DNA of 64,000 nucleotides from Haliotis rufescens (lineage: Eukaryota), in the NCBI RefSeq assembly GCF_023055435.1, contig NW_025963890.1, positions 57,288,001-57,352,000 of the forward strand, given 5' to 3'. A program made the position numbers and the translations under genes. The notes under the pieces were generated by a model. The model saw only the letters and a program-made list of their open reading frames with translations. It had not been told where the DNA came from and ran no database searches. Of this stretch, positions 3,030 to 62,192 are shown one piece after another; within the stretch, counting starts at the first letter, position 1; the number at the start of each line of letters is the position of its first letter.

Positions 3030-3227
3030 CATTACGTAATGACAAGCATTATCTTATCACAGAGTCATGATGCTATGTTACTGAGACAATTTACAACGTG
3101 ACCGCCATCTTGGGTAATGAATGCCTGACGGTGGATGACGTCGGTCAACAGGGGGATATAAACGCTCTTGTTCTGGACACTCGACACAAAGACCTTTGCT
3201 TGAATTCTGGTTCAGTAGCAGCACACG
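3030..3227 (+). promoter_or_regulatory. Promoter and non-coding exon 1 of paralog 1
   Basis: TATAAA at 3157-3162; exon-1 sequence homologous to the other paralogs, ending at donor G|GTAAG (3227/3228). Upstream are palindrome CATTACGTAATG (3030-3041), CCGCCATCTT (3102-3111) and TGACGTCG (3136-3143). Confidence 0.75.
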
Positions 3228-4116
3228 GTAAGGAAACTTTTACGTAGACTCAGATGATATGTTCGTGTATCAAAGAGACTGTAATTTATTTGAATCATTA
3301 ATTGTGCATGATTCACTGAAACTGTTATTTATCCTTTAAAACCATGTGATGTGTTGGATGCAAATATAGCTTTTCATGGTCCTCGTCACTACTACCTCAT
3401 CGATATGTTTGTTAGTCACACATGAAACAGTGGAACATTGATTTTGATCGTTAGTGCGATTGTTGGATATACATTTTAACTTTTATTTCCCTTAAAACCA
3501 TTTGATGTATTGGTTGGTAGAAACAGATCTTTTATGGAAATGAAAGTTGACCACTATCTTGACCACGATCGTTAGTCATAGTTGATGTTCAATTTCATAT
3601 GCTTCATAGAGAAATCAGAACTTTATATATTTGATTTATATAGCGTAGGGAGTTGCAAGAGGTAGAATGTGTTGGTCATTCGTATTAATTTATTTATATT
3701 TTCGATCCTAACATGACAACAACCATACTTTTGTTTCAAAAGGTATAATGCAATACTCAACCTTATTATTCTATTTGTACTTTTAAAACCTAAGATTACA
3801 ATTATTTTAAAATACTTTACACATGTATATACATGTTTTTTTTCCTGGTTTCCTTTACGTGAAGAAAAGATTATCGACTGATTCTTATATTATACAAAGA
3901 GTGAATGAGATATATGGGCAAAGCGTTTCAATTATTTGAAATTGTGAATGGTACTTTCTCATTGAATCAGTCTTTTTTTGTATTATCAATAGTCCCTGTT
4001 TAGAAGATACATTTTAACTCACTCACTTCAACTTCAATAATCCATTTTTTCTTTTGAAATTCACTGATTTCAATTAAGTTACTGTATTATAATTATAGGT
4101 CCAACCTGGTCAAATC

Positions 4117-4761
4117 ATGACGACAGCAGTTTGTGTAATTATTGCCTTTTTGGCAGTGACCATACACGGTACGTATATACAAATATACCCAAAAACGTTT
4201 TGGACTTAATTTTAAACTGTGCAATATTGTCAAAAAGATATTTTTCTAAAAAGCTAGCAGCGACTATTCATGTTATATATCATTGATGTTTTCTCATATC
4301 GAATATTGACAGCACAGGGCATGCCTTCATCAGCTCAGAACAGTGTCGGGTACGATATGAAAGCCTCCAACGTCCCCCTCGGTAGCACCGTCAACGGCAT
4401 ACCACTCGCACCTACACAGCATCCGAGCCCGATGCCAGGCGCTCTCTTGTCCCATGCCAGTAATGTCTTCAATAACAACCACCCGACGGCTGCCACCAAC
4501 AATCAACACGCCAACAACGCTGCCCAGTCCCCCATGAACTATCTCCCGTTCATGATGGGGGGTGACAACGGGCGCAGGATGGCCATGTACAGCATGATGA
4601 TGAACCCAAGGCAGTCCAACAATATGATGCTCCCTTTCGCCATGATGAACGGCGTCGACAACATGTGGCCCATGATGGCTCTCATGAACAATCGCAACCA
4701 GAGAGGTGGACAAGGCTTCGACCCCATGACGATGATGTTGCTTGGAGGCGAGATGATGTAA
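4117..4761 (+). CDS. Secreted Met/Asn-rich low-complexity protein, paralog 1 (159 aa, or 166 aa with the upstream acceptor)
   Basis: join(4117..4168, 4334..4761), with an alternative in-frame acceptor at 4313. Exon 2 encodes signal peptide MTTAVCVIIAFLAVTIH; phase-1 GT..AG intron; AATAAA at 4902. Confidence 0.9.
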
Positions 4762-5124
4762 CCACGACCCTACGACTGTAATAATTTATCCATTTCATGT
4801 CACCTATTTATTGAAGAATGGACGTCCCAACTATTTCCGACCTCTGATTCATATATTGTATTTCAATTTAAAAAATGTTGCTGTATGAACATTCTCACTA
4901 AAATAAAGAGATTGCATCAATATGAAATTAATTGTTTTATGTGAATGGACTTTAGACAGATCTATTCAAAGATAGCATTTTATTTTCGACTACGGTACTG
5001 TTTCTACATATTAAGCAAGAAAGATGCATTCATATTATTAAAGGCCCCTTCACTCAAGACGCCATTGCCAGAGAATATTTATGAAGATATTCTCGATTAT
5101 CAGCCAAACAGATTCCATTAGGCG

Positions 5125-5345
5125 TAAACAGACAGGTAGACAGACAGACAGACAGACAGCTTATTCAGTAATTTAGGCATCAAGGCCCATAGTACAATGC
5201 AGATTGGATATTAACATTTGTCACGTGAGGTACATGATAAGATTATTATTATAAAGACACGTTTTAAAATACAGAAACAAAATAGATCATATCAGGATTT
5301 TAGCAGATTTTTAATTAACTGACGGTCTTTAAAAATACATTGCAC
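5125..5345 (-). mobile_element. 3' tail fragment of a LINE ending in (CTGT)n
   Basis: Its reverse complement matches 9450-9548 (…GGGCCTTGATGCCTAAATTAC.GAATAA.CTGTCTGTCTG); duplicated at ~14045-14265. Confidence 0.6.
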
Positions 5346-5663
5346 GTAAAAGGCAAAATAGTGATGAAATGTATATGAATTGATCACTGAAAATCAGTGA
5401 TGACACCAGGTGTATGTGAAGAGGGTATAAGCGTACCATTTTTTTCGTAGACCAAGAGGTATAAAAGAAGGGAAAAGCTCATGGTACCTTTCCCAGCTGC
5501 GGTAAAGTAGCGGTCAGTTTTTAAAATTCAATAAAAAAAACCCTTTATATCCATATGGCATACATAACATTCGCGGATGTTCGAAGTGGTGCACAGCACT
5601 GCTATCCAAATTAATTATTTGCTTTGTTGTTAATAGAGCTATAGTAGGGCTGAGTTGGAAAAA

Positions 5664-5810
5664 GAGTGAGTGATGTGTGTTTTACGCCGTTTTTAGCAAT
5701 ATTCCAGCAATATCACAACAGGGGACTCCAGGATATTTCACAGGTTGCACGCATGTGGGGAATCGAACCCATGTCTTCGGCGTGACAAACGCTTTAACCA
5801 CTACCCCACA
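5664..5810 (-). mobile_element. tRNA-derived SINE family A, diverged copy
   Basis: B box GGTTCGATTCC on the minus strand and the shared GATATTGCTGGAATATTGCTAAAA.CGGCGTAAAAC tail. Confidence 0.85.
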
Positions 5811-6444
5811 TTCCCTGATATAGTAGGAGAACATCCTGACACTATGGTAGTTATTTAGCTCCGATATGATGTATTTGGCAAAAGGCAGAAAATGTTTTAT
5901 TAAACTTTTATCACAAGACTAGGGCCTCTTCTACAAGCGATATTATACCTTAAAATCGACTTTCGACAGTCGTAGCGTTGAGGTAGCTTACTGGAACGTG
6001 ACTCTGGACCTCGTCTGCATAAACAGTATTAGTTCTTGTGCTGCCTGACCTTATGTGTGACGAGATAAAGGACCGACCATTTTTAGTGGGTATGAGTAAC
6101 CAGAACACCTTACCCTACACATCGTTTAAGATCATGTATCAGCACTATTTTCTTATGTTGGAACTCAAGTAGCTTCAAATTACAGGTAGCTCGAATTATG
6201 CTTGATTGTCCCAAAGCTTTGTAACTGTTGATCTTGTGCAAAATGTTAGGCTTATATAGCCAATATAAACAGCCGTATGTTGTGTTGCTAAACCAACACG
6301 AACACAAGGATTATTTCTAGTACAGTGTCATGTGACGGGTACCTCCGTCTATCCTTGTGACGGGCACCTGTCTGGGTACCTCTATGACAGGTATCTCACT
6401 GTAAATCTATGACTTGTGTCTCTGTGTTTCTTTGTTACTTTTTT

Positions 6445-12534: not shown

Positions 12535-12728
12535 ACAAGAATTATGTGATAACCAAGTCATGAAGACATGGTCACTTGACAACTTACAACATGTACATCA
12601 TGTAGACGGGTAATGTATTGCTGACAGGAAACCACGACCCACTGCAACACCAGCGGATATAAAAGGCCAAGTGCTGGACATTCAGCACATCATCCCTGGC
12701 TTGAGTTCTTGTTCAGAAGCAGCACAAG
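12535..12728 (+). promoter_or_regulatory. Promoter and non-coding exon 1 of paralog 2
   Basis: Conserved ~125-bp upstream block, TATAAAA at 12658-12664, donor AAG|GTAAG at 12728/12729. Confidence 0.8.
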
Positions 12729-13032
12729 GTAAGGAAACATCAACTATTTGTATCTTATATAGCTTCAGAATAAAGTAATACTAACCAAATATAATCTTTA
12801 AGTGTTTGAGTTGCTATCGCAATAATAATAGTAACAAATTCATACAGTGAGTTAATTTGTTTTACACCAATGTGAACAGTATTTTAGTTTTCGCGTCCTC
12901 TTATTGTAGGAGGAAAGCCCTTCACGTTACCCGTCTTTTGTAACGGTAATGGCAGTGAAGTAACCAAACTATTACTGATCTGGTTACAATTTCCTATTTA
13001 TATCATTTTTTCTCCCACAGAAAAGACGAATT

Positions 13033-13677
13033 ATGAAAGCAGTAGTTTGTGTCCTTTGTGCCTTCGTGGCAGTCACAATCCATGGTAAGTAATGAATATT
13101 TATTAGATTATAATATACTCCTTATATTTATATTTATAAATAGATGACACTTATATCAAATTGTTTGCATGTCTAAAGATATTCCAAGCATATTTCATAG
13201 AATTCAATGTTTCCTTTTGAAGAATAACTGGAAATATGTTCTTTTTCAGCTCAGAACAGTGTCGCCCCCGGAATGACGGCATCTGGCGTCCCCCTCGGTA
13301 ACTCGGTCAACGGTGTTCCTTTCGCATCTGCACAGCATCCGAGCCCGATGCCAGGCGCTCTCTTGTCCCATGCCAGTAATGTCTTCAATAACAACCACCC
13401 GACGGCTGCCACCAACAATCACCACGCCAACAACGCTGCCCAGTCCCCCATGAACTATCTCCCGTTCATGATGGGGGGTGACAACGGGCGCAGGATGGCC
13501 ATGTACAGCATGATGATGAACCCAAGGCAGTCCAACAATATGATGCTCCCTTTCGCCATGATGAACGGCGTCGACAACATGTGGCCCATGATGGCTCTCA
13601 TGAACAATCGCAACCAGAGAGGTGGACAAGGCTTCGACCCCATGACGATGATGTTGCTTGGAGGCGAGATGATGTAA
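13033..13677 (+). CDS. Secreted Met/Asn-rich protein, paralog 2 (159 aa)
   Basis: join(13033..13084, 13250..13677); signal MKAVVCVLCAFVAVTIHA then QNSVAPG...; canonical splice sites; AATAAA at 13818. Confidence 0.92.
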
Positions 13678-14579
13678 ACACGACCCTACGACTGTAATAA
13701 TTTATCCATTTCATGTCACCTATTTATTGAAGAATGGACGTCCCAACTATTTCCGACCCCTGATTCATATATTGTATTTCAATTTCAAAAATGTTGCTGT
13801 ATGAACATTCTCACTAAAATAAAGAGATTGCATCAATATGAAATTAATTGTTTTATGTGAATGGACTTTGAGACAGATCTATTCAAAGATAGCATTTTAT
13901 CTTCGAGTACGGCACTGTTTCTACATATTAAGCAATAAAGATGCATTCATATTATTAAAGGCCCCTTCACTCAAAACGCCATCGCCAGAGAATATTTATG
14001 AAGATATTCTCGATTATCAGCCAAACAGATTCCATTAGGCGTAAACAGGCAGGTAGACAGACAGACAGACAGACAGCTTATTCAGTAATTTAGGCATCAA
14101 GGCCCATAGTACAATGCAGATTGGATATTAACATTTGTCACGTGAGGTACATGATAAGATTATTATTATAAAGACACGTTTTAAAATACAGAAACAAAAT
14201 AGATCATATCAGGATTTTAGCAGATTTTTAATTAACTGACGGTCTTTAAAAATACATTAGACGTAAAAGGGAAAATAGTAATGAAATGTATATGAATTGA
14301 TCACTGAAAATCAGTGATGACACCAGGTGTATGTGAAGAGGGTATAAGCGTACCATTTTTTTCGTAGACCAAGAGGTATAAAAGAAGGGAAAAGCTCATG
14401 GTACCTTTCCCAGCTGCGGTAAAGTAGCGGTCAGTTTTTAAAAAATCAATAAAAAACAACCTTTATATCCATATGGCATACATAACATTCGCGGATGTTC
14501 AAAGTGGTGCACAGCACTGCTATCCAAATTAATTATTTGCTTTGTTGTTAATAGAGCTATAGTAGGGCTGAGTTAGAAA

Positions 14580-21411: not shown

Positions 21412-21605
21412 ACAAGAATTATGTGATAACCAAGTCATGAAGACATGGTCACTTGACAACTTACAACATGTACATCATGTAGACGGGTAATGTATTGCTG
21501 ACAGGAAACCACGACCCACTGCAACACCAGCGGATATAAAAGGCCAAGTGCTGGACATTCAGCACATCATCCCTGGCTTGAGTTCTTGTTCAGAAGCAGC
21601 ACAAG
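21412..21605 (+). promoter_or_regulatory. Promoter and non-coding exon 1 of paralog 3
   Basis: TATAAAA at 21535-21541; donor at 21605/21606. Confidence 0.8.
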
Positions 21606-21909
21606 GTAAGGAAACGTCAACTATTTGTATCTTATATAGCTTCAGAATAAAGTAATCCTAACCAAATATAATCTTTAAGTGTTTGAGTTGCTATCGCAAT
21701 AATAATAGTAACAAATTCATACAGTGAGTTAATTTGTTTTACACCAATGTGAACAGTATTTTAGTTTTCGCGTCCTCTTATTGTAGGAGGAAAGCCCTTC
21801 ACGTTACCCGTCTTTTGTAACGGTAATGGCAGTGAAGTAACCAAACTATTACTGATCTGGTTACAATTTCCTATTTATATCATTTTTTCTCCCACAGAAA
21901 AGACGAATT

Positions 21910-22554
21910 ATGAAAGCAGTAGTTTGTGTCCTTTGTGCCTTCGTGGCAGTCACAATCCATGGTAAGTAATGAATATTTATTAGATTATAATATACTCCTT
22001 ATATTTATATTTATAAATAGATGACACTTATATCAAATTGTTTGCATGTCTAAAGATATTCCAAGCATATTTCATAGAATTCAATGTTTCCTTTTGAAGA
22101 ATAACTGGAAATATGTTCTTTTTCAGCTCAGAACAGTGTCGCCCCCGGAATGACGGCATCTGGCGTCCCCCTCGATAACTCGGTCAACGGTGTTCCTTTC
22201 GCATCTGCACAGCATCCGAGCCCGATGCCAGGCGCTCTCTTGTCCCATGCCAGTAATGTCTTCAATAACAACCACCCGACGGCTGCCACCAACAATCACC
22301 ACGCCAACAACGCTGCCCAGTCCCCCATGAACTTTCTCCCGTTCATGATGGGGGGTGACAACGGGCGCAGGATGGCCATGTACAGCATGATGATGAACCC
22401 AAGGCAGTCCAACAATATGATGCTCCCTTTCGCCATGATGAACGGCGTCGACAACATGTGGCCCATGATGGCTCTCATGAACAATCGCAACCAGAGAGGT
22501 GGACAAGGCTTCGACCCCATGACGATGATGTTTCTTGGAGGCGAGATGATGTAA
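21910..22554 (+). CDS. Secreted Met/Asn-rich protein, paralog 3 (159 aa)
   Basis: join(21910..21961, 22127..22554); signal exon identical to paralog 2; AATAAA at 22671. Confidence 0.92.
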
Positions 22555-22922
22555 ACACGACCCTACGACTGTAATAATTTATCCATTCATGTGACCTGAT
22601 GATGTATTTATTGAACTCACAACCCAACAATTACCGACCCCTGATGATATGGATTTTTTATAGATTGATCAATAAAAGTGCATTGATAAAGTAAATAATG
22701 TTCTCCTTTTTCAATTGAAACACATTTATTCACAAGAAGTGAACGAGATTTGGGGGGGGGGGGGAGACAAAATGGAGAGAGAGAGAGAGAGTTTGAAGGG
22801 GAGAGATGCATTGTTGAATGAACAGTTCTTTTCACTTATCGTTTAGTTGTACATATATAATGTTGTATTGCCTTAAAATATCTATTTGTACCATTTTATT
22901 TTATAGAAAGAAGTTGTTATAT

Positions 22923-27687: not shown

Positions 27688-27881
27688 ACAAGAATTATGT
27701 GATAACCAAGTCATGAAGACATGGTCACTTGACAACTTACATCATGTACATCATGTAGAAGGGTAACGTATTGCTGACGGGATACCACGACCCACTGCCA
27801 CACCAGGGGATATAAAATGCCCAGTGCTGGATATTCAGCACATCATCCCTGGCTTGAGTTCTGGTTCAGAAGCAGCACAAG
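27688..27881 (+). promoter_or_regulatory. Promoter and non-coding exon 1 of paralog 4
   Basis: TATAAAA at 27811-27817; donor at 27881/27882. Confidence 0.8.
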
Positions 27882-28201
27882 GTAAGGAAACGTCAACTAT
27901 TTGTGTCATATATAGCTTCAGAATAAAGTTATCCTGACCAAATATAATACGTCTTAAAATGTTTGTACTACTATCTCCAGAGGAAGGAAAAGTAAAAATT
28001 GTATATATAGTGAGTTAATTTGTTTTACGCCAATGTGAACAGTATTTTAGTTATCGCGTCCTCTTATTGTAGGAGGAAAGCCTTTCACGGTTACCTGCCT
28101 TTGTAACGGTAATGGTAGTGAAGTACACATTTCAAGTCATTATTGTTATGTTTATAACTTTCTATTCATATTATTTTTTTATTTTCCAGGAAAGACGAAT
28201 A

Positions 28202-28316
28202 ATGAAAGCAGTAGTTTGTGTCATTTTCGCCTTTGTGGCAGTCACCATTCATGGTAAGTAGTTTAGTGAGTGAGTGAGTTAATATTTAACGTCACATCGG
28301 CAGTACTTTAGTAGAA

Positions 28317-28359
<43 letters not shown>

Positions 28360-29110
28360 CAGCAGTAGTAGTAGTAGCAGCAGTAGTAGTAGTAGCATAA
28401 TTCTTATTATTGTTGCTATTATGTACAGATTAAAATAATAAAATGCAGCAAAGAGGGTTTGCGTGATTCTGGCACAGTCAGGCTGGTTAGGGTCATTATC
28501 AGCTCAGGGTCCTTGCCCCCTCAGCGAATAATAATAAAATAATTATTATTTTTACTCTGTAGATGAAGATTGTATCAATTATATGCATGCCCAAGCATGT
28601 CTCAAACTTATTTTTACAGTATTCAATGTTTTCTTTTGAAGTATTCTAAATAAAATATGATCTGAAATATGTTCTTTTTCAGCTCAGAATAGTGTCGCCC
28701 CCGGAATGACAGCATCTAGCATTCCACTCGGCAACACTGTCAACGGCATACCCCTCGCACCTGCACAGCATCCGAGCCCGATGCCAGGCGCTTTCTTGTC
28801 CCATGCCAGTAATGTCTTCAATAACAACCACCCGACGGCTGCCACCAACAATCACCACGCCAACAACGCTGCCCAGTCCCCCATGAACTATCTCCCTTTC
28901 ATGATGGGGGGTGACAACGGGCGCAGGATGGCCATGTACAGCATGATGATGAACCCAAGGCAGTCCAACAATATGATGCTCCCTTTCGCCATGATGAACG
29001 GCGTCGACAACATGTGGCCCATGATGGCTCTCATGAACAATCGCAACCAGAGAGGTGGACAAGGCTTCGACCCCATGACGATGATGTTTCTTGGAGGCGA
29101 GATGATGTAA
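28202..29110 (+). CDS. Secreted Met/Asn-rich protein, paralog 4 (159 aa)
   Basis: join(28202..28253, 28683..29110); signal MKAVVCVIFAFVAVTIHA; AATAAA at 29251. Confidence 0.92.
28309..28397. repeat. (TAG/CAG)n microsatellite in intron 2
   Basis: Seen directly; the equivalent positions in paralogs 5 and 6 are N-gaps. Confidence 0.95.
28420..28522 (-). mobile_element. 3'-terminal ~100 bp of the R4/Dong-like element, in intron 2
   Basis: Its reverse complement matches 417-521; flanked by TAA/TTA-rich tracts; also present at ~35483-35578 and ~42597-42697. Confidence 0.85.
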
Positions 29111-29286
29111 CCACGACCCTACGACTGTAATAATTTATCCATTTCATGTCACCTATTTATTGAAGAATGGACGTCCCAACTATTTCCGACCCCTGATTCA
29201 TATATTGTATTTCAATTTCAAAAATGTTGCTGTATGAACATTCTCACTAAAATAAAGAGATTGCATCAATATGAAATTAATTGTTT

Positions 29287-34905: not shown

Positions 34906-35207
34906 TTGTATCATATAAAGCTTCAGAATAAAGTAATCCTAACCAAATATAATACGTCTTTAAATGTTTGAACTACTATCTCCAGAGGAAATAATAGTAA
35001 AAATTGTATATATAGTGAGTTAATTTGTTTTACGCCAATGTGAACAGTATTTTAGTTATCGCGTCCTCTTATTGTAGGAGGCAAGCCCTTTGTAACGGTT
35101 ACCTGCCTTTGTAACGGTAATGGTAGTGAAGTACACAATTTTAAGTCATTATTGTTATGTTTATTACTTTCTATTCATATTTTTTTTTTCTCCAGGAAAG
35201 ACGAATT

Positions 35208-36149
35208 ATGAAAGCAGTAGCTTGTGTCATTTTCGCCTTTGTGGCAGTCACCATTCATGGTAAGTAGTTTAGTGAGTGAGTGAGTTAATATTTAACGTCA
35301 CATCGGCAGTACTTTAGTAGTANNNNNNNNNNNNNNNNNNNNNNNNNNNNNNNNNNNNNNNNNNNNNNNNNNNNNNNNNNNNNNNNNNNNNNNNNNNNNN
35401 NNNNNNNNNNNNNNNNNNNNNNNNNNNNNNNNNNNNNNNNNNNNNNNNNNNNNNNNNGCATAATTATTAATATTGTTGTTATTATGTACAGATTAAAATA
35501 ATAAAATGCAGCAAAGAGGGTTTGGGTGATTCTGACACAGTCAGGCTGGTTAGGGTCATCATCAGCTCGGGGTCCTTGTTATTTATTATTATTATTCTGA
35601 AGACGAAAATTTTAACTATTATATGCATGTCCAAGCATGTTTCAAACTATTTCTTACAGTATTCAATGTTTTCTTTTGAAGTATTCTAAATAAAATATGA
35701 TTGGAAATATGTCCTTTTCAGCTCAGAATAGTGTCGCCCCCGGAATGACGGCATCTAGCATTCCACTCGGCAACACCGTCAACGGCATACCCCTCGCACC
35801 TGCACAGCATCCGAGCCCGATGCCAGGCGCTCTCTTGTCCCATGCCAGTAATGTCTTCAATAACAACCACCCGACGGCTGCCACCAACAATCACCACGCC
35901 AACAACGCTGCCCAGTCCCCCATGAACTTTCTCCCTTTCATGATGGGGGGTGACAACGGGCGCAGGATGGCCATGTACAGCATGATGATGAACCCAAGGC
36001 AGTCCAACAATATGATGCTCCCTTTCGCCATGATGAACGGCGTCGACAACATGTGGCCCATGATGGCTCTCATGAACAATCGCAACCAGAGAGGTGGACG
36101 AGGCTTCGACCCTATGACAATGATGTTTCTTGGAGGCGAGATGATGTAA
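35208..36149 (+). CDS. Secreted Met/Asn-rich protein, paralog 5 (159 aa)
   Basis: join(35208..35259, 35722..36149); signal MKAVACVIFAFVAVTIHA; N-gap inside intron 2; AATAAA at 36307. Confidence 0.9.
35323..35457. other. N-gap over the intron-2 microsatellite
   Basis: Run of N. Confidence 0.99.
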
Positions 36150-36852
36150 ACACGACTCTCTTATATTGATTTATCCATTTCATTTTATTTCACCTATTTA
36201 TTGATGTATGAACTAACTACCTAACTATGACCGACCGTGGATTAACGTCACCTTTTTATTGATATATGAACGACAACTGGCAATGTTTTCCTTCTAGAAA
36301 TGATGTAATAAACATGCTTTGGAATAATGAAAACCCTTTGTACCACTTTATAAATATAATGAAATATAAAATGTCAATGCAATAGAATAACTTGTCTTGA
36401 TTATTCGTCGAAACAGATTCTATTGGACGTAAAACACAAAATGGTGGTGAAAATTATATGAATGGACCACTGAAACTCACTGATGAGGTTTTGCGAAAAG
36501 GGTAAGCATGTCCTGTCCTACCGGTAGCAACCGCCACTCACACAATTTAAATAAATAATTGTTTATTTCCTGACACCGCACAACACCGCACAACACCGCA
36601 CAACAGTTCCCCTGCGATGTGACGGCGACCTGTTAACAAACCAGACAATCAAGTGATCGATGAACCAGAAAATCTAGTGACACGATAGTGCATTTACCGA
36701 ACTCCGTTGAAACTAATAAACACGATATTTTAATTTTGCATTACGTCTGTTGCATGTGTACAAGTGCAGAGATTAAGAAAGTTAGCTTTACTTCATCGTC
36801 CAGTTGACGATACAATAAAAAGTTCTAAGTCATGCCTGATAAAGAATATTAT

Positions 36853-41647: not shown

Positions 41648-41841
41648 ACAAGAATTATGTGATAACCAAGTCATGCAGACATGGTCACTTGACAACTTAC
41701 ATCATGCACATTATGTAGACGGGTAATGTATTGCTGACGGGAGACCACGACCCACTGCAATACCAGGGGATATAAAATGCCCAGTGATGGACATTCAACA
41801 CATCATCCCTGGCTTCAGCTCTGGTTCAGAAGCAGCACAAG
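41648..41841 (+). promoter_or_regulatory. Promoter and non-coding exon 1 of paralog 6
   Basis: TATAAAA at 41771-41777; donor at 41841/41842. Confidence 0.8.
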
Positions 41842-41870
41842 GTAAGGAAACGTCAACTATTTGTATCATA

Positions 41871-42040
41871 GTGAGTGAGTGAGTTAGTTTGATTTTACGC
41901 CGCTTTTAGCAATATTCCAGCAATATCACGGCGGGGGACACCAGAAATGGGCTTCACACATTGTACCCATGTCGGGATTCGAACCCGGGTTTTCGGCGTG
42001 ACGAGCGAATGCTTTAACCAGTAGGCTACCCGACCGCCCC
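41871..42040 (-). mobile_element. SINE family A in intron 1 of paralog 6
   Basis: Same insertion site as 34728-34905. Confidence 0.92.
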
Positions 42041-42340
42041 TTGTTTCATATAAAGCTTCAGAATAAAGTAATCCTAACCAAATATATACGTCTTTAAATG
42101 TTTGAACTACTATCTCCAGAGGAAATAATAGTAAAAATTGTATATATATTGAGTTAATTTGTTTTACGTCCATGTGAACAGTATTTTAGTTATCGCGTCC
42201 TCTTATTGTAGGAGGAAAGCCTTTCACGGTTACCTACCTTTGTAACGGTAATGGTAGTAAAGTACACAATTTCAAGTCATTATTGTTATGTTTATAACTT
42301 TCTATTCATATTCATTTTTATTCTCCAGGAAAGACGAATT

Positions 42341-43284
42341 ATGAAAGCAGTAGTTTGTGTCATTTTCGCCTTCGTGGCAGTCACCATTCATGGTAAGTAG
42401 TTTAGTGAGTGAGTGAGTGAGTAAATATTTAACGTCANNNNNNNNNNNNNNNNNNNNNNNNNNNNNNNNNNNNNNNNNNNNNNNNNNNNNNNNNNNNNNN
42501 NNNNNNNNNNNNNNNNNNNNNNNNNNNNNNNNNNNNNNNNNNNNNNNNNNNNNNNNNNNNNNNNNNNNNNNNNNNATTCTTCTTATTGTTGTTATTGTGT
42601 ACAGATTAAAATAATAAATACAGCAAAGAGAGTTTGGGTGATTCTGGTACAGTCAGGCTGGTTAGGGTCATCATCAGCTCAGGGTCCTTGCCCCCTCAGC
42701 GAAAAATAATAAAATAATTATTATTATTACTCTGTAGACGAAGATTTTATCAATTATATGCATGTCCAAGCATGTTTCAAACTAATTTTTACAGTATTCA
42801 ATGTTTTCTTTTGAAGTATTCTAAATAAAATATGATTGGAAATATGTCCTTTTCAGCTCAGAATAGTGTCGCCCCCGGAATGACGGCATCTAGCATTCCA
42901 CTCGGCAACAACGTCAACGGCATACCCCTCGCACCTGCACAGCATCCGAGCCCGATGCCAGGCGCTCTCTTGTCCCATGCCAGTAATGTCTTCAATAACA
43001 ACCACCCGACGGCTGCCACCAACAATCAACACGCCAACAACGCTGCCCAGTCCCCCATGAACTATCTCCCTTTCATGATGGGGGGTGACAACGGTCGCAG
43101 GATGGCCATGTACAGCATGATGATGAACCCAAGGCAGTCCAACAATATGATGCTCCCTTTCGCCATGATGAACGGCGTCGACAACATGTGGCCCATGATG
43201 GCTCTCATGAACAATCGTAACCAGAGAGGTGGAAAAGGGTTCGACCCCATGACGATGATGTTGCTTGGAGGCGAGATGATGTAA
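42341..43284 (+). CDS. Secreted Met/Asn-rich protein, paralog 6 (159 aa)
   Basis: join(42341..42392, 42857..43284); signal MKAVVCVIFAFVAVTIHA; AATAAA at 43443. Confidence 0.9.
42438..42575. other. N-gap over the intron-2 microsatellite
   Basis: Run of N. Confidence 0.99.
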
Positions 43285-43977
43285 ACACGACTCTCTTATA
43301 TTGATTTATCCATTTCATTTCATGTCACCTATTTATTGATGTATGAACTAACTTCCCAACTATGACCGACCGTGAATTTAACGTCACCTTTTTATTGATA
43401 TATGAACGACAACTGGCAATGTTTTCCTTCTAGAAATGATGTAATAAACATGCTTTGGAATAATGAAAACCTTTTGTACCACTTTATTAAAATAATGAAA
43501 TATAAAATGTCAATGCAATAGAATAACTAGTCTTGATTATTCGTCGAAACAGATTCTATTGGATATAAAACACAAAATGGTGGTGAAAATTATATGAATG
43601 GACCACTGAAACTCACTGATGAGGTTTTGCGAAAAGGGTAAGCATGTCCTGTCCTACCGGTAGCAACCGCCACTCACACAATTTAAATAAATAATTGTTT
43701 ATTTCCTGACACCGCACAACACCGCACAACAGTTCCCCTGCCATGTGACGGCGACCTGTAAACAAACCAGACAATCAAGTGATCGATGAACCAGAAAATA
43801 TAGTGACTTGATAGTGCATTTACCGAACTCCGTTGAAACTAATAAACACGATATTTTAATTTTGTATTACGTCTGTTACATGTGTACAAGTGCAGAGATT
43901 AAGAAAGTTAGCTATACTTCATCGTCCAGTTGACGATACAACAAAAAGTTCTAAGTCATGCGTGATGAAGAATATTA

Positions 43978-49185: not shown

Positions 49186-49379
49186 ACAAGAATTATGTGA
49201 TAACCAAGTCATGCAGACATGGTCACTTGACAACTTACATCATGCACATTATGTAGACGGGTAATGTATTGCTGACGGGAGACCACGACCCACCGCCACA
49301 CCAGGGGATATAAAAGGCTCAGTGCTTGACATTCAACACATCATCCCTGGCTTCAGCTCTGGTTCAGAAGCAGCACAAG
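49186..49379 (+). promoter_or_regulatory. Promoter and non-coding exon 1 of paralog 7
   Basis: TATAAAA at 49309-49315; donor at 49379/49380. Confidence 0.8.
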
Positions 49380-49479
49380 GTAAGGAAACGTCAACTATTT
49401 GTATCATATATAGCTTCGGATATGTATAGGCTAAGTATACGTTGAGAGTGTGTGGTGTGTATTGCCCCGTTAACACCGT

Positions 49480-50332
49480 GTTTAATACCAGGAGGTCGTA
49501 CAAAGGTTAGCGCATCCTCTCCCACACCCATCACAAACACATACAAAGGCAAGTGAATTGTTCATCTAAAGCATACCGGGAACAAATAGTACAAATCAAA
49601 ATGGGGATGTACATTGGGCATCATTTTAGTCTCCGATGCGTCAAATTTGGTAATGTGCTCAAATGTTTCGTGATTCTTTATGCATAGATCTACATATCAA
49701 ATAGGTGAGATTGATTCTTATATGTCAGGTTGGTAAATCAGTGGAAGGGAATAAGCTTTTTTACGTTATTGAGAGATGTCAGATTATCGATATAACTAAG
49801 GCTTAAGTTAAACGTCTTGACCAAACTCGACCGCCTCCGTGGTCTAGTGGTAGAGCGTCCGCCCGGAGAGCGGCAGGTCCGGGATCGATCCCCTGCCGCG
49901 TCGTACCAAAAGACGTTAAAAGATGGTATTTGTTGTTACCCTATCTGGCGCTCGGCATTAAGGGGCTAAAACAAGGACTGGTCGGCTCGGAGTCAGTATA
50001 CTGTGTTAAACTGCGGCATGATATCTCAGTGGACTAGCACTTTTAATGGGCATCAGTCCGGACTAGTACAAGCAGCCACACACCCACACCCACGTGCATG
50101 CACGTCGCTATTTTAGTGCAATAACGACGTTAAACCCCAGTTCTCCTCAACTCACCATGACCAAATTCCCTTGTTTTAATTTTGTCTAACCGCGAAGACG
50201 TTCTCATTCGTATACACAAAGAAACAGATCAGTAAGGAGAGGAGCACAGTCGGTGCCCATGGTGATGCCTGCATCGTCTGAATGTCCCATCCCAAATTCC
50301 CAAAGATGTTATCTATGAGGAAGTCCAGCATT
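49480..50332 (-). mobile_element. Decayed Penelope-like (Naiad-type) RT core in intron 1 of paralog 7
   Basis: Minus strand reads MLDFLIDNIF.., GITMGTDCAPLLTDLFLCVYE (the GIPMGTNCAP motif) and FNLSLSYIDNLTSLNN (mutated YIDD); interrupted by a SINE. Confidence 0.75.
49829..50156 (+). mobile_element. tRNA-derived SINE family D (Meta-domain-like core)
   Basis: A box TGGTCTAGTGG and B-box-like GGATCGATCCC; core GTCGTACCAAAAGACGTTAAAAGATGGTA...TGGCGCTCGGCATTAAGG; TSD about TGACCAAA(C/T)TC. Confidence 0.8.
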
Positions 50333-50438
50333 TAGCAATATTCCAGCAATAACACGGTGGGGGACTTCAGAAATGGGCTTCATTCGTGTATTTTCTTTTA
50401 TTAATGTTGTTGTTTATCTCTTGCAGGAAAGACGAATC

Positions 50439-51307
50439 ATGAAGACAGCAATTTGTGCTCTTTTCGCCTTCGTGGCAGTCACTATTCATGGTAGGTGATG
50501 GCAGCTTCAAAAATAAATGTTCGTAATGCTTTCGTGTCCCCTGAAAACAAACGACTGCACATTGCATAAAATGTGGCCGAGTTAGTACGACGAATTCCTG
50601 TATTTCCTAATGCTGTTTTCGGGCCATATTTCCGCAATATTTCCCTTGATTACGTTCTATTTAGATATGAGAATAACAGTTCTTTTTTCAAAACAACTGC
50701 TTCAGCTCAGAATAGTGTCGTCCCCGGGAATACAGCGTCCAACGTGCCCCTCGGAAACGGTGTTCCTTTCTCACCTGCACAGCATCCGAGCCCGATGCAT
50801 GTCTAAAGATATTCCAAACATATTTCATAGAATACAATGTTTTCCTTTGAAGAATGACTGGAAATATGTTCTTTTTCAGCTCAGAACAGTGTTGCCCCCG
50901 GAATGACGGCATCTAGCGTTCCCCTCGGCAACAACGTCAACGGCATACCCCTCGCACCTGCACAGCATCCGAGCCCGATGCCAGGCGCTCTCTTGTCCCA
51001 TGCCAGTAATGTCTTCAATAACAACCACCCGACGGCTGCCACCAACAATCACCACGCCAACAACGCTGCCCAGTCCCCCATGAACTATCTCCCTTTCATG
51101 ATGGGGGGTGACAACGGGCGCAGGATGGCCATGTACAGCATGATGATGAACCCAAGGCAGTCCAACAATATGATGCTCCCTTTCGCCATGATGAACGGCG
51201 TCGACAACATGTGGCCCATGATGGCTCTCATGAGCAATCGCAACCAGAGAGGCGGACGAGGCTTCGACCCTATGACGATGATGTTTCTTGGAAGCGAGAT
51301 GATGTAA
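50439..51307 (+). CDS. Secreted Met/Asn-rich protein, paralog 7 (159 aa)
   Basis: join(50439..50490, 50880..51307); signal MKTAICALFAFVAVTIHA; a competing upstream acceptor lies at 50706; AATAAA at 51424. Confidence 0.85.
50706..50806 (+). pseudogene. Truncated duplicate of the 5' part of exon 3, within intron 2 of paralog 7
   Basis: TTCAG|CTCAGAATAGTGTC... encodes AQNSVVPGNTASNVPLGNGVPFSPAQHPSPMHV*. Confidence 0.85.
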
Positions 51308-51874
51308 CCACAACCCTCTGATTGTCTTAATTTATCCATTTCATGTCACCTATTTATAGATGTACGAACTAACTGCCCAGCTATTACCGACCCCTGACAG
51401 TTTAGTGTTTCTGAGGACTAAGCAATAAAGATGCATTGACATGTTACAATATCTCTTTGTACCATTCTCTTTTATAGAAAGCAGTTTTACTCGTTGGCCA
51501 ATGACACTTGACAATGGTCGCCTTCACGTAAAACCTTGAAATACACTGATATTTTATGATTTTTTACAAACATCATCAGCAACTTCAATCATCGACAAGG
51601 CTTTTCAAATGTACAACTGAATCAATATTAGTTCATTAGTTCATCGTTTAGTTACTAGTATTAACCCCTTCACGTGATGTGATTGTCACTTAACTGTTCT
51701 TCTCACAGAAGGTACTTATATTTCAAGCAGTTGGTATTGCAAATGGAATGAATATTCTGAGTGAACCGTGAAATAAAATCTAACAATTAAATATCGCATA
51801 TTTTTCTCAACTTCTTTCAGTGAGTTAGTGAGTCAGTAAGGAGGGTTTTACTAAGTCCAACTAGGATCTACATA

Positions 51875-56262: not shown

Positions 56263-56328
56263 GCTAATATTGTATTGAATATATGATGAATATTCACAAT
56301 TTCTCTTTACAGAAAATAACATACAGAC

Positions 56329-56681
56329 ATGAAAGTATTTTGCATCTGTATAGCTCTGTTTGGCGTTGCAGTTTACGGTAAGTAAACATATCATGGATTT
56401 CTTATAAAGATAATGTTCTACCGCTCCTCAAATATGTATACGTACCTATACCTCTCACCCCACAACACTTCTTTAAGACGTGAGATATATATTGTACTCT
56501 GCGAATCATGTCTATTAGTATGTAAGACGCATAGAAAATGCTATAATTGCGTGTATTTAATGTCGAAATCACATGGTCGATAGGCTTGATAAAATGAAAA
56601 TTACCAAAAACGAACAAATGGTTAAAACGATCTCTTATGATTATGGTCGGTAGTAGTAGTAGAAGAAGAAGTAGTAGTAGT

Positions 56682-56760
<79 letters not shown>

Positions 56761-57210
56761 AACCTTAATTCACATGAAACATTTTTGCTACCAGCTCAAG
56801 CCCCTCCATCAAGTCATCCTACCTTGAACATCCAAGCCTACCCCACGGCGAATACCTACTCTTACCCAATGTCAAACAACTACGCCTACCGAGGGAACAA
56901 CGGCAACATCATGTCGTCTTACAGTGGTTACCATAGCAACGCCGCGTCAACTCAAAATGGTTACCAGAGCAACAACAACATCAACTCTTTCCTGCTTCCA
57001 ATGATGATGGGTATGGATCAAGGAAATCACATGGCAACTCTCGGAATGATGATGAACTCCAAACAGGGCAACAGCATGCTCCCCTTCTACATGATGAACC
57101 AAGGGTATGAGAACATGCTACCCATGATGGCCTTCATGAACCGCGGCAACCAGAGAGGCCAGAGGATGAACCCCTTCATGATGATGACTCTTAGTGAAGC
57201 GATGAACTGA
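56329..57210 (+). CDS. Divergent secreted Met/Asn/Tyr-rich paralog 8 (154 aa)
   Basis: join(56329..56377, 56795..57210); signal MKVFCICIALFGVAVYA then QAPP...; same phase-1 intron. The C-terminal domain aligns with paralogs 1-7 (LPMMMG..MMMN..Q.N.MLPF.MMN...NM.PMMA.MN..NQRG...P..MM). AATAAA at 57359. Confidence 0.9.
56650..56760. repeat. (TAG/CAG/AAG)n microsatellite in intron 2 of paralog 8
   Basis: Seen directly. Confidence 0.95.
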
Positions 57211-57574
57211 GGAACATTGTCTTAACTGTGTCATTTATATTTATGAAGGGAATACAAGGGGTTGGTTATTTAAGCATTTTCCGGATGAACATCCTCGATG
57301 CAGTCATTACTTACATCATTATTTATTAATCAGCTGCATATTTCATATATAGTCATTGAATAAAATCTTTCGAATTATATGGTATTGATGTTTTGTATGT
57401 CTACATTTAGATGTAATGCCACTGAACTGATTATACAGTTTGTTTAAGTGGTTCTTAGTTAATAAAAGCGACAAAGCCCTTTCAGAATTCATAAGGAATC
57501 TTTGCCCAAAACTGAGTCGATTGTACGATTCCGACAATATAATGAGCACGTGCTTGTGAATCACTATCAAATAG

Positions 57575-60730: not shown

Positions 60731-61087
60731 TGTAATCTCTAATAGTTTCTGCATTGAAACATTTTGGGGAAATTCAAGGACAGAACATGTACTTGGCTGA
60801 TTGTGTGCCATCGTTCCGACAAGGCAAGAATAAATGCTCCTGTTATCAACTATTGGTTGAAAGTGAAATATTTACAGAGTTGCATTAACTTTCTCTTTAT
60901 TGAAACCCCAAACGCCATACAGATGAAGAGAGTTGCTCTTATGGCTCATCGCTTAACACGTTAACGTGAATGTTATCCTTGCTTTGGGAGTTACTAGGAG
61001 ATAAACTGCAATTTCAACGGCGCTTCTATTGTGTCGAGCGTGCAGCAATAGGGCTCAACTGTCACTATTGGGACAACAATGTAAAAC

Positions 61088-61368
61088 GGGGGCACGGGTG
61101 GCCCAGTCGTCTTATGCGCCGCGATTCGCTGTGCAGAGTTGCGTCCCTTGGGCACGCCAGAAACCTATGATTGTGGGTTCGAATCCCGGTTCGCCCAAAT
61201 TATGTTTCTAGGTTTGTCAGCACCATACCCGTGCTCGTGGGTTTCACCGAAGTGATAAACCTCTTAGACCTGCATCACTTCGGCTTTCCTCCCACATTAA
61301 GCTGACACGCCGCGATATAACTGCAATAGTGTTAAAAGCGGCGTTAAACCCAACTCACTCACTCACTC
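61088..61368 (+). mobile_element. SINE family C, independent insertion
   Basis: TSD ACAATGTAAAAC; matches 39852-40135. Confidence 0.9.
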
Positions 61369-61443
61369 ACAATGTAAAACAGAGTGTTGTGCACTCACCT
61401 TACAACAATACAGTTAAAACGACACTGTTAATATAGTAGCTAT

Positions 61444-61614
61444 GGGGGGCGGTCGGGTAGCCAAGCGGTTAAAGAGATCGTTCGTCACGCCGATGACCTG
61501 GGTTCGATTCCCGACATGGGTCAATGTGAGAAGCCCATTTCTGGTGTCCCCCGCCGTGATATTGCTGCAATATTTCTAAAAGCGGCGTAAAATCTGACTC
61601 ACTCACTCACTCAC
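61444..61614 (+). mobile_element. SINE family A
   Basis: TSD TAGTAGCTAT at 61434-61443 and 61615-61624. Confidence 0.9.
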
Positions 61615-61729
61615 TAGTAGCTATAGTGTGAAATAAACAAACGCAATAACATTACATTAAAAGAGAGATGTTATTCAATAAACACTCATTATATAAAGGT
61701 ATTGGTTAATCATTCATAGATAAGTGTAT

Positions 61730-61974
61730 CTGTTTGTTTGTTTTCTGTTTAACGCCGCTCAGCAATATTCCAGCTATATGACGGCGGTCTGTAAATAATC
61801 GAGTCTAGACCAGACAATCTAGTGATTGACATCATGAACATCGATCCATGGCAATTTGGATACGATGACATCCATCAACCAGGTCAGCGAGCCTGACCAC
61901 CCGATCCCGTTAGTCGCACCATACGGCAAGCATGGGTTTCTGAAGACCTATTCTATCCCTGATCTTCACGGGTA
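61730..61974 (-). mobile_element. SINE-like family B, full length
   Basis: Complete head and tail; flanked by AGATAAGT. Confidence 0.85.
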
Positions 61975-62019
61975 CGCAGATAAGTACTCCTCTGACATTC
62001 ATAGCTGTGATGGTTTTGT

Positions 62020-62192
62020 CAATGTTCCTTATTCAACACTTCATGACGTTGTTGGTGTTGCTCTGGTAACCATTTCTGGTGGATGCGGCGTTGCTTTGGT
62101 AACCAATGTCAGACAACAAGATATTGCTGTTGTTAGACTGGTAGACGAAGCATGGGTATTTGTCGTGGGGTAAGCTGGTGCAGAGGCTTGGC
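62020..62192 (-). pseudogene. Inverted, frameshifted, internally deleted copy of paralog-8 exon 3 (paralog 9)
   Basis: Minus strand has the same acceptor as paralog 8 (ACATTTTTGCTACCAG|). It reads QASAPAYPTTNTH, then in a shifted frame VYQSNNSNILLSDIGYQSNAASTRNGYQSNTNNVMKC*, followed by the AGGAACATTG UTR start. Confidence 0.85.

What the first reader, a model, noticed from the sequence alone, without database searches (positions are those of the whole stretch)
3157..62192. Tandem family of at least 8 intact genes for small secreted Met/Asn-rich proteins I cannot assign to a named family
Seen: eight three-exon genes with TATA, non-coding exon 1, a 16-17-codon hydrophobic exon 2, a phase-1 intron and exon 3, plus relics. 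The signal-peptide exons are absent from the ORF track and appear only after splicing. The mature protein has no Cys and has three parts: Pro/Gly/Ser-rich, then Asn/His/Ala-rich, then a 75-aa C-terminal domain with 21 Met by hand count in paralog 2. Known: secreted low-complexity proteins in tandem arrays are typical of molluscan shell-matrix, mucus and adhesive secretomes; Met-rich shell proteins exist, e.g. Pinctada MRNP34, but I see no homology. Inferred: a dosage-amplified, lineage-specific extracellular material or defence protein family.
Basis: partly seen in the sequence, partly recalled or inferred. Interest (0 to 1): 0.9.

Follow-up and report, generated by a model that had tools for sequence, protein, structure and literature searches.

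The report
Abalone secreted methionine-rich gene array
Eight intact, transcribed genes in this red-abalone window, part of an array of at least 16, encode small secreted cysteine-free proteins with a conserved, roughly 28% methionine tail found only in abalones so far and never studied.

Summary
The window is Haliotis rufescens DNA. It holds eight same-strand three-exon genes: TATA, non-coding exon 1, a 16-17-codon signal-peptide exon, a phase-1 intron and exon 3. Exon by exon, they reproduce eight RefSeq "uncharacterized protein" models exactly. Spliced contigs in transcriptome-sized runs show both introns removed. Both assembly gaps lie inside intron 2 (genes 5 and 6) and touch no exon.

The family is larger than reported: 16 genes on this contig within about 133 kb, plus 3 on another contig. 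There are four subtypes. Their low-complexity N-terminal parts are unrelated (8-24% identity), but they share a 77-residue C-terminal domain (38-53% identity; 21 Met in the last 75 residues).

Pfam, PDB sequences, two very large protein libraries and the ESM Atlas give no relatives outside Haliotis (rufescens, cracherodii, asinina) apart from two unlabelled contigs. AlphaFold2 predicts disorder with four weak helices in the C-domain. dN/dS is 0.17-0.27.

Function is untested and the expressing tissue is unknown. My best guess (0.4) is a self-associating extracellular material protein. The rivals are a Cu(I) sponge, a distant relative of the nacre protein ML6A10 (similarity suggestive, not significant), an oxidant sink or methionine store, and a peptide precursor. 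The scan's first readers also noted the neighbouring part of the array.

The parts
3157..4934 (+). Gene 1 (RefSeq LOC124143634, 166 aa, type A with a 7-residue insert after the signal peptide). TATA near 3157; exon 1 ends 3227; signal-peptide exon ATG 4117 to 4168; intron 2 4169-4312; exon 3 4313-4761; 3' UTR to about 4934.
   Evidence: Exons match P0008 exactly. A transcript with this gene's junction (VTIHAQGMPS) is the deep contig in run X2, and the same form appears in a related species (X5).
12658..13813 (+). Gene 2 (LOC124143645, 159 aa). TATA 12658; exon 1 to 12728; intron 1 12729-13020; exon 2 13021-13084 (ATG 13033); intron 2 13085-13249; exon 3 13250-13677; 3' UTR at least to 13813.
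   Evidence: matches P0015; spliced contigs skip both introns at GT..AG.
21535..22645 (+). Gene 3 (LOC124143160, 159 aa). TATA 21535; exon 1 to 21605; exon 2 21898-21961 (ATG 21910); exon 3 22127-22554.
   Evidence: matches P0005. Unit 3 aligns with unit 2 over its whole 8.9 kb.
27811..29283 (+). Gene 4 (LOC125382107, 159 aa). TATA 27811; exon 1 to 27881; exon 2 28190-28253 (ATG 28202); intron 2 28254-28682; exon 3 28683-29110.
   Evidence: matches P0013.
34628..36213 (+). Gene 5 (LOC124143165, 159 aa). TATA 34628; exon 1 to 34698; exon 2 about 35196-35259 (ATG 35208); intron 2 35260-35721, which contains the assembly gap 35323-35457; exon 3 35722-36149.
   Evidence: matches P0006. The gap flanks are collinear with intron 2 of gene 4.
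41771..43371 (+). Gene 6 (LOC124143656). TATA 41771; exon 1 to 41841; exon 2 42329-42392 (ATG 42341); intron 2 42393-42856, which contains the assembly gap 42438-42575; exon 3 42857-43284.
   Evidence: The exons match residues 45-203 of P0014. The 44-residue N-terminal extension of that RefSeq model is absent from all paralogs. The gap flanks are collinear with gene 4.
49309..51397 (+). Gene 7 (LOC124143666, 159 aa). TATA 49309; exon 1 to 49379; exon 2 50427-50490 (ATG 50439); intron 2 50491-50879; exon 3 50880-51307.
   Evidence: matches P0010.
56313..57400 (+). Gene 8 (LOC124143673, 154 aa, type B: Tyr/Asn/Gln-rich N-part). Exon 2 56313-56377 (ATG 56329, 16 codons plus 1 base); intron 2 56378-56794 with a (GTA)n run; exon 3 56795-57210. 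Exon 1 was not located.
   Evidence: (matches P0023).
13444..13674 (+). Conserved Met-rich C-terminal domain of 77 aa, shown here in gene 2. The same domain lies at the end of exon 3 of all eight genes (gene 8: 56980-57207).
   Evidence: Alignments A1 and A2. Identity is 38-53% across subtypes against 8-24% in the N-part. Weak helices are predicted at residues 66-73, 77-88, 107-120 and 130-136 of exon 3.
29287..29329 (+). Relic: a 45-nt copy of the end of exon 3, just downstream of gene 4.
   Evidence: 91% identity to nt 384-428 of gene 2's exon 3.
50706..50798 (+). Relic inside intron 2 of gene 7: a diverged copy (77%) of the first 102 nt of exon 3.
   Evidence: The RefSeq model uses the downstream acceptor at 50880.
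62041..62202 (-). Inverted, frameshifted relic of a type-B exon 3. It keeps the N-part (LLPGQASAPAYPTTNT..., then GYQSNAASTRNGYQSNTNN in another frame) and lacks the Met-rich domain.
   Evidence: (85% over 85 nt to gene 8's exon 3, minus strand).

Best explanation
These genes encode a Haliotis-restricted family of small secreted, intrinsically disordered proteins made in bulk from a tandem array. Each protein has three parts: a cleaved signal peptide (mature N-terminus probably Gln), a fast-changing low-complexity spacer, and a conserved 77-residue Met-rich C-terminal module. The spacer is Pro/Gly/Ser then Asn/His/Ala in type A, Tyr/Asn/Gln in type B, poly-Asn in type C and Gly/Met/Pro repeats in type D. 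The C-terminal module is built from LP[FY]xMM..G.DNM-like units. My reading is that they form an extracellular material such as mucus or gel, an adhesive, jaw, radula or cuticle, periostracum or an egg coat. In that reading the C-terminal module folds into short Met-lined amphipathic helices that hold molecules together through Met-Met and Met-aromatic contacts. The prion-like, sequon-free Asn/Tyr/Gly spacer then sets the physical properties, and gene dosage supplies the quantity. Shown here: gene structure, splicing, transcription, amplification, domain conservation, purifying selection and predicted disorder. Inferred only: secretion, self-association, and the material and tissue.
For: Eight intact genes match RefSeq models exactly and spliced contigs exist at word depths of about 540-620. 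The N-terminal exon reads M-K/T, then 13-14 hydrophobic residues, then TIHA|Q or AVYA|Q, which fits the -3/-1 rule by direct reading. The genome holds 19 copies, 16 of them in one same-strand array, and whole 7-9 kb units were duplicated. The C-domain is conserved across four subtypes while the N-parts cannot be aligned. This modular layout recalls structural proteins with conserved terminal domains and variable cores; that comparison is from general knowledge. Pooled dN/dS is 0.17 for the C-domain and 0.27 for the N-part. AlphaFold2 gives mean pLDDT 52, a coil N-part and four short helices in the C-domain. There is no Cys and almost no Lys. Seven of the eight family proteins counted have no N-x-S/T sequon and one has a single sequon, despite 17-31 Asn each and an expected 1.5-4 sequons per protein. 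That fits Asn being needed unglycosylated, as in polar-zipper or prion-like assemblies. The dibasic site of type A is not conserved in the other types, which argues against processing into peptides.
Against: No tissue, proteome or localisation evidence was obtained. The dimer test of the C-domain gave no answer. No family peptide occurs in the held H. laevigata shell-proteome supplements, so a shell-matrix role at least is unsupported. Composition-based reasoning is weak, and Met-rich secreted segments elsewhere often bind Cu(I) rather than build materials. The alignment behind the structure model is shallow (11 rows), so the helices are uncertain.
Confidence: 0.4

Rival explanations
1. Extracellular Cu(I)/Ag(I) buffer or chaperone. 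On this reading the protein is a disordered 'metal sponge' whose thioether-rich C-domain wraps Cu(I) through MxM, MxxM and MM motifs, helped in type A by the His-rich segment. It would work like bacterial periplasmic SilE/PcoE, the Met-rich insert of CueO and the Mets motifs of the Ctr1 ectodomain. Such a protein could be useful to an animal that makes hemocyanin and is sensitive to copper.
For: The last 75 residues hold 21 Met. Each protein has 2-4 MxM, 3-4 MxxM and 3-9 MM motifs, no Cys in the mature part of seven of the eight proteins counted (one in P0020), and type A has 5-6 His. The protein is disordered with helical propensity and has about 140 mature residues, similar to SilE (the SilE comparison is from general knowledge). 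Papers found (PMC11494321, PMC12041951) describe Met-rich domains as Cu(I) recruiters in oxidising compartments.
Against: There is no sequence relation to any metal-binding family. His is not conserved: H. asinina type D P0020 has none and gene 8's type B has 3. The invariant residues are mostly P, G, N and R rather than only Met. Nineteen gene copies and variable bulky spacers are not needed for a chaperone. No metal data exist.
Confidence: 0.15
2. Shell-matrix or periostracal proteins distantly related to the Met-rich nacre protein ML6A10 of H. asinina.
For: ML6A10 (sequence in the supplement of PMC2989941) is a small secreted protein of 130 aa. It has ...NNPYLMMMGDK......DPSSQ... and ...NRLRGAQG..., and it ends in ...AMM. 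These lie in the same order as LPFMMGGD, NPRQS, NRNQRGGQG and ...EMM in this family. Its H. rufescens ortholog (G000:C2:34819185-34819442) aligns in that register with the family profile. The HMM score is 7.1 bits, reached by 19 of 3000 composition-preserving shuffles.
Against: hhalign gives E 0.076 and probability under 1%. BLASTP gives E 0.37. I picked the comparison by eye among 14 shell proteins, so the shuffle p-value is post hoc. The family profile did not find the ML6A10 locus in the genome. No family peptide occurs in the held H. laevigata shell-proteome supplements, and the family is not among the 14 H. asinina shell proteins.
Confidence: 0.12
3. Sacrificial oxidant sink or methionine/nitrogen store. 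In this reading a secreted protein's many exposed Met residues scavenge ROS or hypohalous acids, for example from algal food or at epithelia. Alternatively it stores the limiting amino acid Met for eggs or larvae, like the Met-rich delta-zeins of maize.
For: Composition is extreme: 16% Met and 15% Asn overall, and 28% Met in the tail. The protein is predicted disordered, so the Met residues would be exposed. Gene dosage is high. Contigs in some runs are deep.
Against: A sink or a store needs composition only. Here the order of residues is conserved across subtypes, including invariant P, G, N and R, and dN/dS is 0.17. That points to a specific structure or interaction.
Confidence: 0.1
4. Precursors of secreted bioactive peptides (neuropeptide, pheromone or antimicrobial peptide) released by cleavage at basic sites.
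For: The precursors are small, carry a signal peptide, probably have pyroGlu at the mature N-terminus and lack Cys. Type A has G-R-R at the start of the Met-rich part.
Against: The RR site is not conserved: type B has GNH, GRH or GSH, type C has RVNQ and type D has GRN. No repeated identical peptide copies are flanked by KR/RR sites. Neuropeptide genes are rarely amplified 19-fold. Net charge is low for a cationic antimicrobial peptide (pI 7.2-10.6 with only 5-6 Arg).
Confidence: 0.05

Closest known systems
ML6A10, 'Gln- and Met-rich' nacre protein of Haliotis asinina (Marie et al. 2010, PMC2989941)
   Same: Same genus. It is a small secreted protein, it is Met-rich (11%), it has no relatives outside abalone, and a few motifs occur in the same order, including a C-terminal ...MM end.
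   Different: The similarity is not statistically secure (hhalign E 0.076, BLASTP E 0.37). ML6A10 is single-copy in H. rufescens and lies on another contig. It has Lys and fewer Met and Asn. It was found in the shell by MS, whereas no peptide of this family was found in the shell data I could search.
MRNP34, methionine-rich nacre protein of Pinctada
   Same: It is a secreted, Met-rich, low-complexity molluscan protein. The Gly/Met repeats of the type-D relatives on contig C2 recall it in composition. This comparison is from general knowledge and was not tested on the MRNP34 sequence.
   Different: No Pinctada protein appeared in any search: phmmer without a length limit, word-indexed searches with type A, type D and the family profile. 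The MRNP34 sequence was not on hand by reference, so I ran no direct alignment.
Met-rich Cu(I)-binding segments: SilE/PcoE, the CueO Met-rich insert, Ctr1 Mets motifs
   Same: They sit in an extracellular or periplasmic location, are Cys-free and thioether-rich, carry MxM/MxxM motifs, and are disordered with helical propensity (literature).
   Different: There is no sequence homology. The conserved positions here include many non-ligand residues. His is not conserved across subtypes. Metal binding is untested.
Methionine-rich prion-like low-complexity domains (yeast Pbp1/ataxin-2 type; census in PMC9312190)
   Same: Composition is Asn/Gln/Tyr/Gly/Met-rich. The domains are predicted disordered. 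They offer a plausible self-association that could be tuned by Met oxidation.
   Different: Those are intracellular proteins, whereas these carry a signal peptide. There is no homology, and phase separation is untested here.
RefSeq models 'uncharacterized protein' LOC124143634, LOC124143645, LOC124143160, LOC125382107, LOC124143165, LOC124143656, LOC124143666 and LOC124143673 (H. rufescens), with their H. cracherodii and H. asinina counterparts
   Same: These are the same genes, with exon-by-exon identity.
   Different: The models carry no name, family or function. No paper in the searched library mentions the locus or protein accessions or the peptide motifs.

Membership tests
Haliotis Met-rich C-terminal-domain family (unnamed; RefSeq 'uncharacterized protein') | The 77-residue C-terminal domain with LP[FM]..G.D, MMN, NM.P, RG and P invariants | tested here: met
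   All eight window genes align over the whole domain. The profile gives E 1e-29 to 1e-33 against the 19 genomic copies.
Haliotis Met-rich C-terminal-domain family (unnamed; RefSeq 'uncharacterized protein') | Short signal-peptide exon followed by a phase-1 intron one codon before the predicted cleavage site | tested here: met
   One search shows it for all eight genes, and spliced contigs confirm it. Signal-peptide prediction software was not available; the judgement rests on reading the sequence.
ML6A10-type Met-rich shell-matrix proteins (H. asinina) | Significant sequence similarity to ML6A10 or its ortholog | tested here: inconclusive
   hhalign E 0.076. BLASTP E 0.37. The HMM score is reached by 19 of 3000 shuffles, but the comparison was chosen post hoc.
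ML6A10-type Met-rich shell-matrix proteins (H. asinina) | Peptides detected in shell matrix by MS | tested here: not met
   Eleven diagnostic motifs of types A-D are absent from the 28 held supplements of the H. laevigata shell proteome. Some files were cut when stored, and long Met-rich tryptic peptides are hard to detect.
MRNP34 (Pinctada Met-rich nacre protein) | Sequence homology | tested here: not met
   No bivalve protein appeared.
Neuropeptide or prohormone precursors | Conserved mono- or dibasic cleavage sites flanking conserved peptides | tested here: not met
   GRR occurs in type A only. The same column reads GNH, GRH, GSH, VN or GRN in the other types.
Mets-motif Cu(I)-binding proteins | Clusters of MxM or MxxM in an extracellular, Cys-free segment | tested here: met
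   The eight proteins counted have 2-4 MxM, 3-4 MxxM and 3-9 MM motifs each. The mature part has no Cys in seven of the eight and one Cys in P0020.
Mets-motif Cu(I)-binding proteins | Measured Cu(I) or Ag(I) binding | not testable with these tools
   This needs recombinant protein and competition or ITC assays.
Any Pfam family or solved structure | Profile match | tested here: not met
   Pfam gave 0 families at E<=10 for types A and B. The best PDB sequence hit had E = 1. The ESM Atlas gave no usable hit.

The most novel reading that the evidence does not exclude
The conserved Met-rich module is a new kind of animal extracellular domain whose function depends on thioether chemistry. One form of this reading is a Cys-free secreted Cu(I)/Ag(I) sponge, an animal counterpart of bacterial SilE/PcoE. 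The other is a redox switch in which reversible Met oxidation turns assembly of an extracellular material on and off, an extracellular version of the Pbp1-type Met-rich low-complexity switch.
Probability: 0.12. Interest if true: 0.75.

Novelty: new variant of a known kind. Interest (0 to 1): 0.5.

Why it matters
Molluscs build shells, glues, mucus and jaws from lineage-specific secreted low-complexity proteins, and most of these proteins have never been studied. This family stands out in three ways: its tail is about 28% methionine, that tail is a conserved ordered domain shared by four otherwise unrelated protein types, and the genes are heavily amplified and transcribed in a farmed and endangered group of animals. 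Finding where it is made would add a new module to the catalogue of biomaterial or metal-handling proteins. The family could also matter for abalone biology, for example in adhesion, feeding, copper sensitivity or early development. The result also shows that the eight genes are already modelled in RefSeq but lack any name, family or literature.

Tried and rejected
- Pfam scan of types A and B: nothing.
- PDB sequence profile search: nothing.
- ESM Atlas, whole protein and C-domain: no usable hit.
- AlphaFold2 on an 11-row alignment: mean pLDDT 52. I therefore ran no fold search, since matches to a low-confidence model are meaningless.
- Complex prediction on two copies of the C-domain: 'no answer', which counts neither for nor against self-association.
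- The H. laevigata nacre protein idb_54497/CLC_12027 (Gly/Met/Pro repeats) looked like the type-D relatives by its description. Its printed sequence has a Cys-containing C-terminus and no family domain, so I rejected it.
- Literature searches for the LOC and XP accessions and for six peptide motifs: no paper. Searches on Met-rich, Asn-rich and mucus proteomes gave no lead.
- Internal duplication of the C-domain (two LPF...MMN...R.Q halves): reached by 32 of 5000 shuffles in type B but by 762 of 5000 in type A, so plausible and not established.
- Tissue of expression: run, sample and study names are coded, so it could not be read.
I resent it shorter, within the stated limit.
- I did not search the joined (spliced) protein as typed letters. 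Exons were searched by reference, and the full-length proteins used were those returned by the databases.

Full report
WHAT IS THERE

The window is G000:C112:57288001-57352000 of Haliotis rufescens. Eight + strand open frames end at 4761, 13677, 22554, 29110, 36149, 43284, 51307 and 57210. They encode closely related Met/Asn-rich sequences.

In gene 2 the sequence reads as follows:
- TATA at 12658
- a non-coding exon 1 ending CAAG|GTAAGG at 12728
- exon 2 at 13021-13084, reading ATG then KAVVCVLCAFVAVTIH plus one base
- a 165-nt intron
- exon 3 at 13250-13677

A script located the same parts in all eight genes. It compared them exon by exon, without joining them, with database proteins. The signal-peptide exon, the split Ala codon (phase 1) and exon 3 agree residue for residue with H. 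rufescens RefSeq models LOC124143634, LOC124143645, LOC124143160, LOC125382107, LOC124143165, LOC124143656, LOC124143666 and LOC124143673. All of these are named 'uncharacterized protein'.

Genes 1-7 share the promoter, TATA box and exon-1 donor. I did not find exon 1 of gene 8.

Paralog 2 has 21 Met in its last 75 residues, no Cys, and 16% Met and 15% Asn overall. The mature part is about 15 kDa.

ASSEMBLY GAPS

The run of N at 35323-35457 lies in intron 2 of gene 5. The run at 42438-42575 lies in intron 2 of gene 6. No exon or reading frame crosses a gap.

The flanks of both gaps align in order and orientation with the ungapped 429-nt intron 2 of gene 4. Continuity is therefore likely but not shown. 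No letters were filled in.

TRANSCRIPTION AND SPLICING

The one run search returned runs with coded names. I laid two small, transcriptome-sized contig sets of the same species label (X1, X2), one of a relative (X5) and one DNA-sized set (X15) on 12300-14000.

- X2 has a contig joining 13084 to 13250 (GT..AG) with 62 and 95 letters on the two sides.
- X1 has the same junction in a paralog variant, and a weaker join 12728>13021 with 21 letters on the shorter side.
- A loose end in X2 reads the last 19 bases of exon 1.
- X15 covers the introns, as DNA should.
- Exon-3 contigs have word depths of about 540-620 in X1 and X2.
- The deep X2 contig carries the gene-1-type junction (VTIHAQGMPS). X5 shows the same form in a related species.

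So the genes are transcribed and spliced as modelled. The tissue is unknown.

THE FAMILY IS LARGER THAN THE FINDING

A six-frame search of the whole genome with the C-terminal 85 residues, and then with a family profile, finds 16 copies on this contig between 57,279,049 and 57,412,071. All are on the + strand. Three more lie on contig C2 at 9.15-9.19 Mb.

Reading the loci gives four types:
- Type A: the seven window genes.
- Type B: gene 8 plus seven downstream genes, with Tyr/Asn/Gln-rich N-parts of varying length. At least one of them (P0024) carries extra N-terminal low-complexity sequence.
- Type C: one gene upstream of the window, with poly-Asn and NNGLNNM repeats.
- Type D: the three genes on C2, with GGMTNPMGGM-type repeats.

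In alignment A1 the C-terminal 77 residues keep 38-53% identity across types. The N-parts keep 8-24%, that is, they do not align. Invariant or nearly invariant positions include L, P, G, D, G, M, MM, G, N, M, R, G and P, so the domain is an ordered sequence and not mere composition.

Whole 7-9 kb units were duplicated. Unit 2 and unit 3 align end to end, and units 5-7 align over 85-90% of their length at about 91-92% identity. Pooled Nei-Gojobori dN/dS among genes 2-7 is 0.27 for the N-part and 0.17 for the C-domain (the pairs are not independent).

RELATIVES ELSEWHERE

Three word-indexed searches of 5.8 billion proteins (type A, type D, family profile) and one exhaustive phmmer search of 1.84 billion representatives were run. 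They returned only H. rufescens, H. cracherodii and H. asinina proteins, all 'uncharacterized'. Two unlabelled short contigs (P0018, P0026) and one low-complexity hit also came back.

Pfam, PDB sequences and the ESM Atlas give nothing. No paper in the searchable library names the loci, the accessions or the peptide motifs.

STRUCTURE AND SEQUENCE FEATURES

AlphaFold2 with alignment A2 gives mean pLDDT 52 and pTM 0.18. The N-part is coil, and four short helices lie in the C-domain. I treat this only as 'disordered with helical propensity' and ran no fold search.

Seven of the eight family proteins counted have no N-x-S/T sequon, and one has a single sequon. They carry 17-31 Asn each, and 1.5-4 sequons per protein would be expected. 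The G-R-R of type A is not conserved in the other types. The dimer test of the C-domain returned no answer.

LINKS TO SHELL PROTEINS

The H. asinina shell proteome paper describes three 'Gln- and Met-rich' proteins (PMC2989941). Its supplement prints ML6A10. ML6A10 shares several motifs, in the same order, with the C-domain of this family.

I located its H. rufescens ortholog with a short degenerate pattern. It is single-copy.
- hhalign of the family profile against it gives E 0.076.
- BLASTP gives E 0.37.
- An HMM score of 7.1 bits is reached by 19 of 3000 composition-preserving shuffles.

Because I picked the pair by eye, this is suggestive only.

The Gly/Met/Pro-repeat nacre protein idb_54497 of H. 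laevigata is unrelated; it has a Cys-containing C-terminus. Eleven family motifs are absent from that study's held supplements.

INTERPRETATION

Shown:
- a transcribed, spliced, selectively constrained and strongly amplified gene family
- restriction to Haliotis, so far as the searches can see
- a new conserved Met-rich domain attached to interchangeable low-complexity regions

Inferred:
- secretion, from the form of the N-terminal exon
- bulk production
- self-association into an extracellular material (my best reading, 0.4)

The main rivals are a thioether-based Cu(I) sponge (0.15), a distant ML6A10-like shell or periostracal protein (0.12), an oxidant sink or Met store (0.10) and a peptide precursor (0.05). 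The decisive missing datum is the tissue and stage of expression. The public 12-tissue and developmental RNA-seq set of this species described in PMC6373831 would supply it.

NOVELTY

The gene models are already in RefSeq, so the loci are not new. The family, its domain and its extent are undescribed in the literature I could search. Tandem arrays of lineage-specific secreted low-complexity proteins are a known kind in molluscs. This is a new variant, with an unusually Met-rich conserved module.

LIMITS

- SignalP was not available.
Exons were searched by reference, and the full-length proteins used were those the databases returned.
- Run and sample names were coded.

Noticed in passing
window 10131-10490 and 19010-19369: Two identical 119-aa open frames inside repeat units 2 and 3 match reverse transcriptase (Pfam RVT_1, E 9e-8). 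They are fragments of a non-LTR retroelement that was duplicated along with the gene unit.
   Followed up: partly
window 6373-7826 and 15321 onward; 58691-59866; 63227-63994: Long minisatellite arrays with periods of 35, 48 and 26 nt. The 35-nt array recurs in units 2 and 3 and accounts for the strong negative GC skew at 6-8 kb and 16-18 kb.
   Followed up: no
window 41771-43284 (gene 6) and protein P0014: The RefSeq model LOC124143656 has 203 aa. Its 44-residue N-terminal extension would bury the signal peptide, and no paralog or ortholog has such an extension. This is probably a mis-called start.
   Followed up: partly
window 56650-56762 and 62308-62700: A (GTA)n/(GTT)n-type trinucleotide run lies in intron 2 of gene 8, ending about 30 nt upstream of the exon-3 acceptor. 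A similar run accompanies the inverted type-B relic, so the relic was copied together with its intron.
   Followed up: no
window 50706-50798: A diverged copy of the first 102 nt of exon 3 lies inside intron 2 of gene 7. RefSeq uses the downstream acceptor.
   Followed up: partly
L040/L041 = G000:C2:34817685-34820942: This is the H. rufescens ortholog of the H. asinina nacre protein ML6A10. Its last exon is at L040:1399-1716 and it is single-copy. Its signal-peptide exon (MNSLIFLAVLCTTAYVASAQ) lies about 3.8 kb upstream (L043, near position 2399).
   Followed up: partly
L009 (G000:C112:57277549-57280791) and L017-L019 (G000:C2, 9.15-9.19 Mb): The type C and type D relatives carry one or two extra LP[FLW]-type units after the shared domain (for example ...NNMLPLMFLNQGRGQG... 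and ...ALPFWLLGGQF). The module number therefore varies between subtypes.
   Followed up: partly
proteins P0015, P0008, P0010, P0023, P0024, P0003, P0020: These proteins have no N-glycosylation sequon despite 17-30 Asn each, where 1.5-4 would be expected. P0025 has one.
   Followed up: partly
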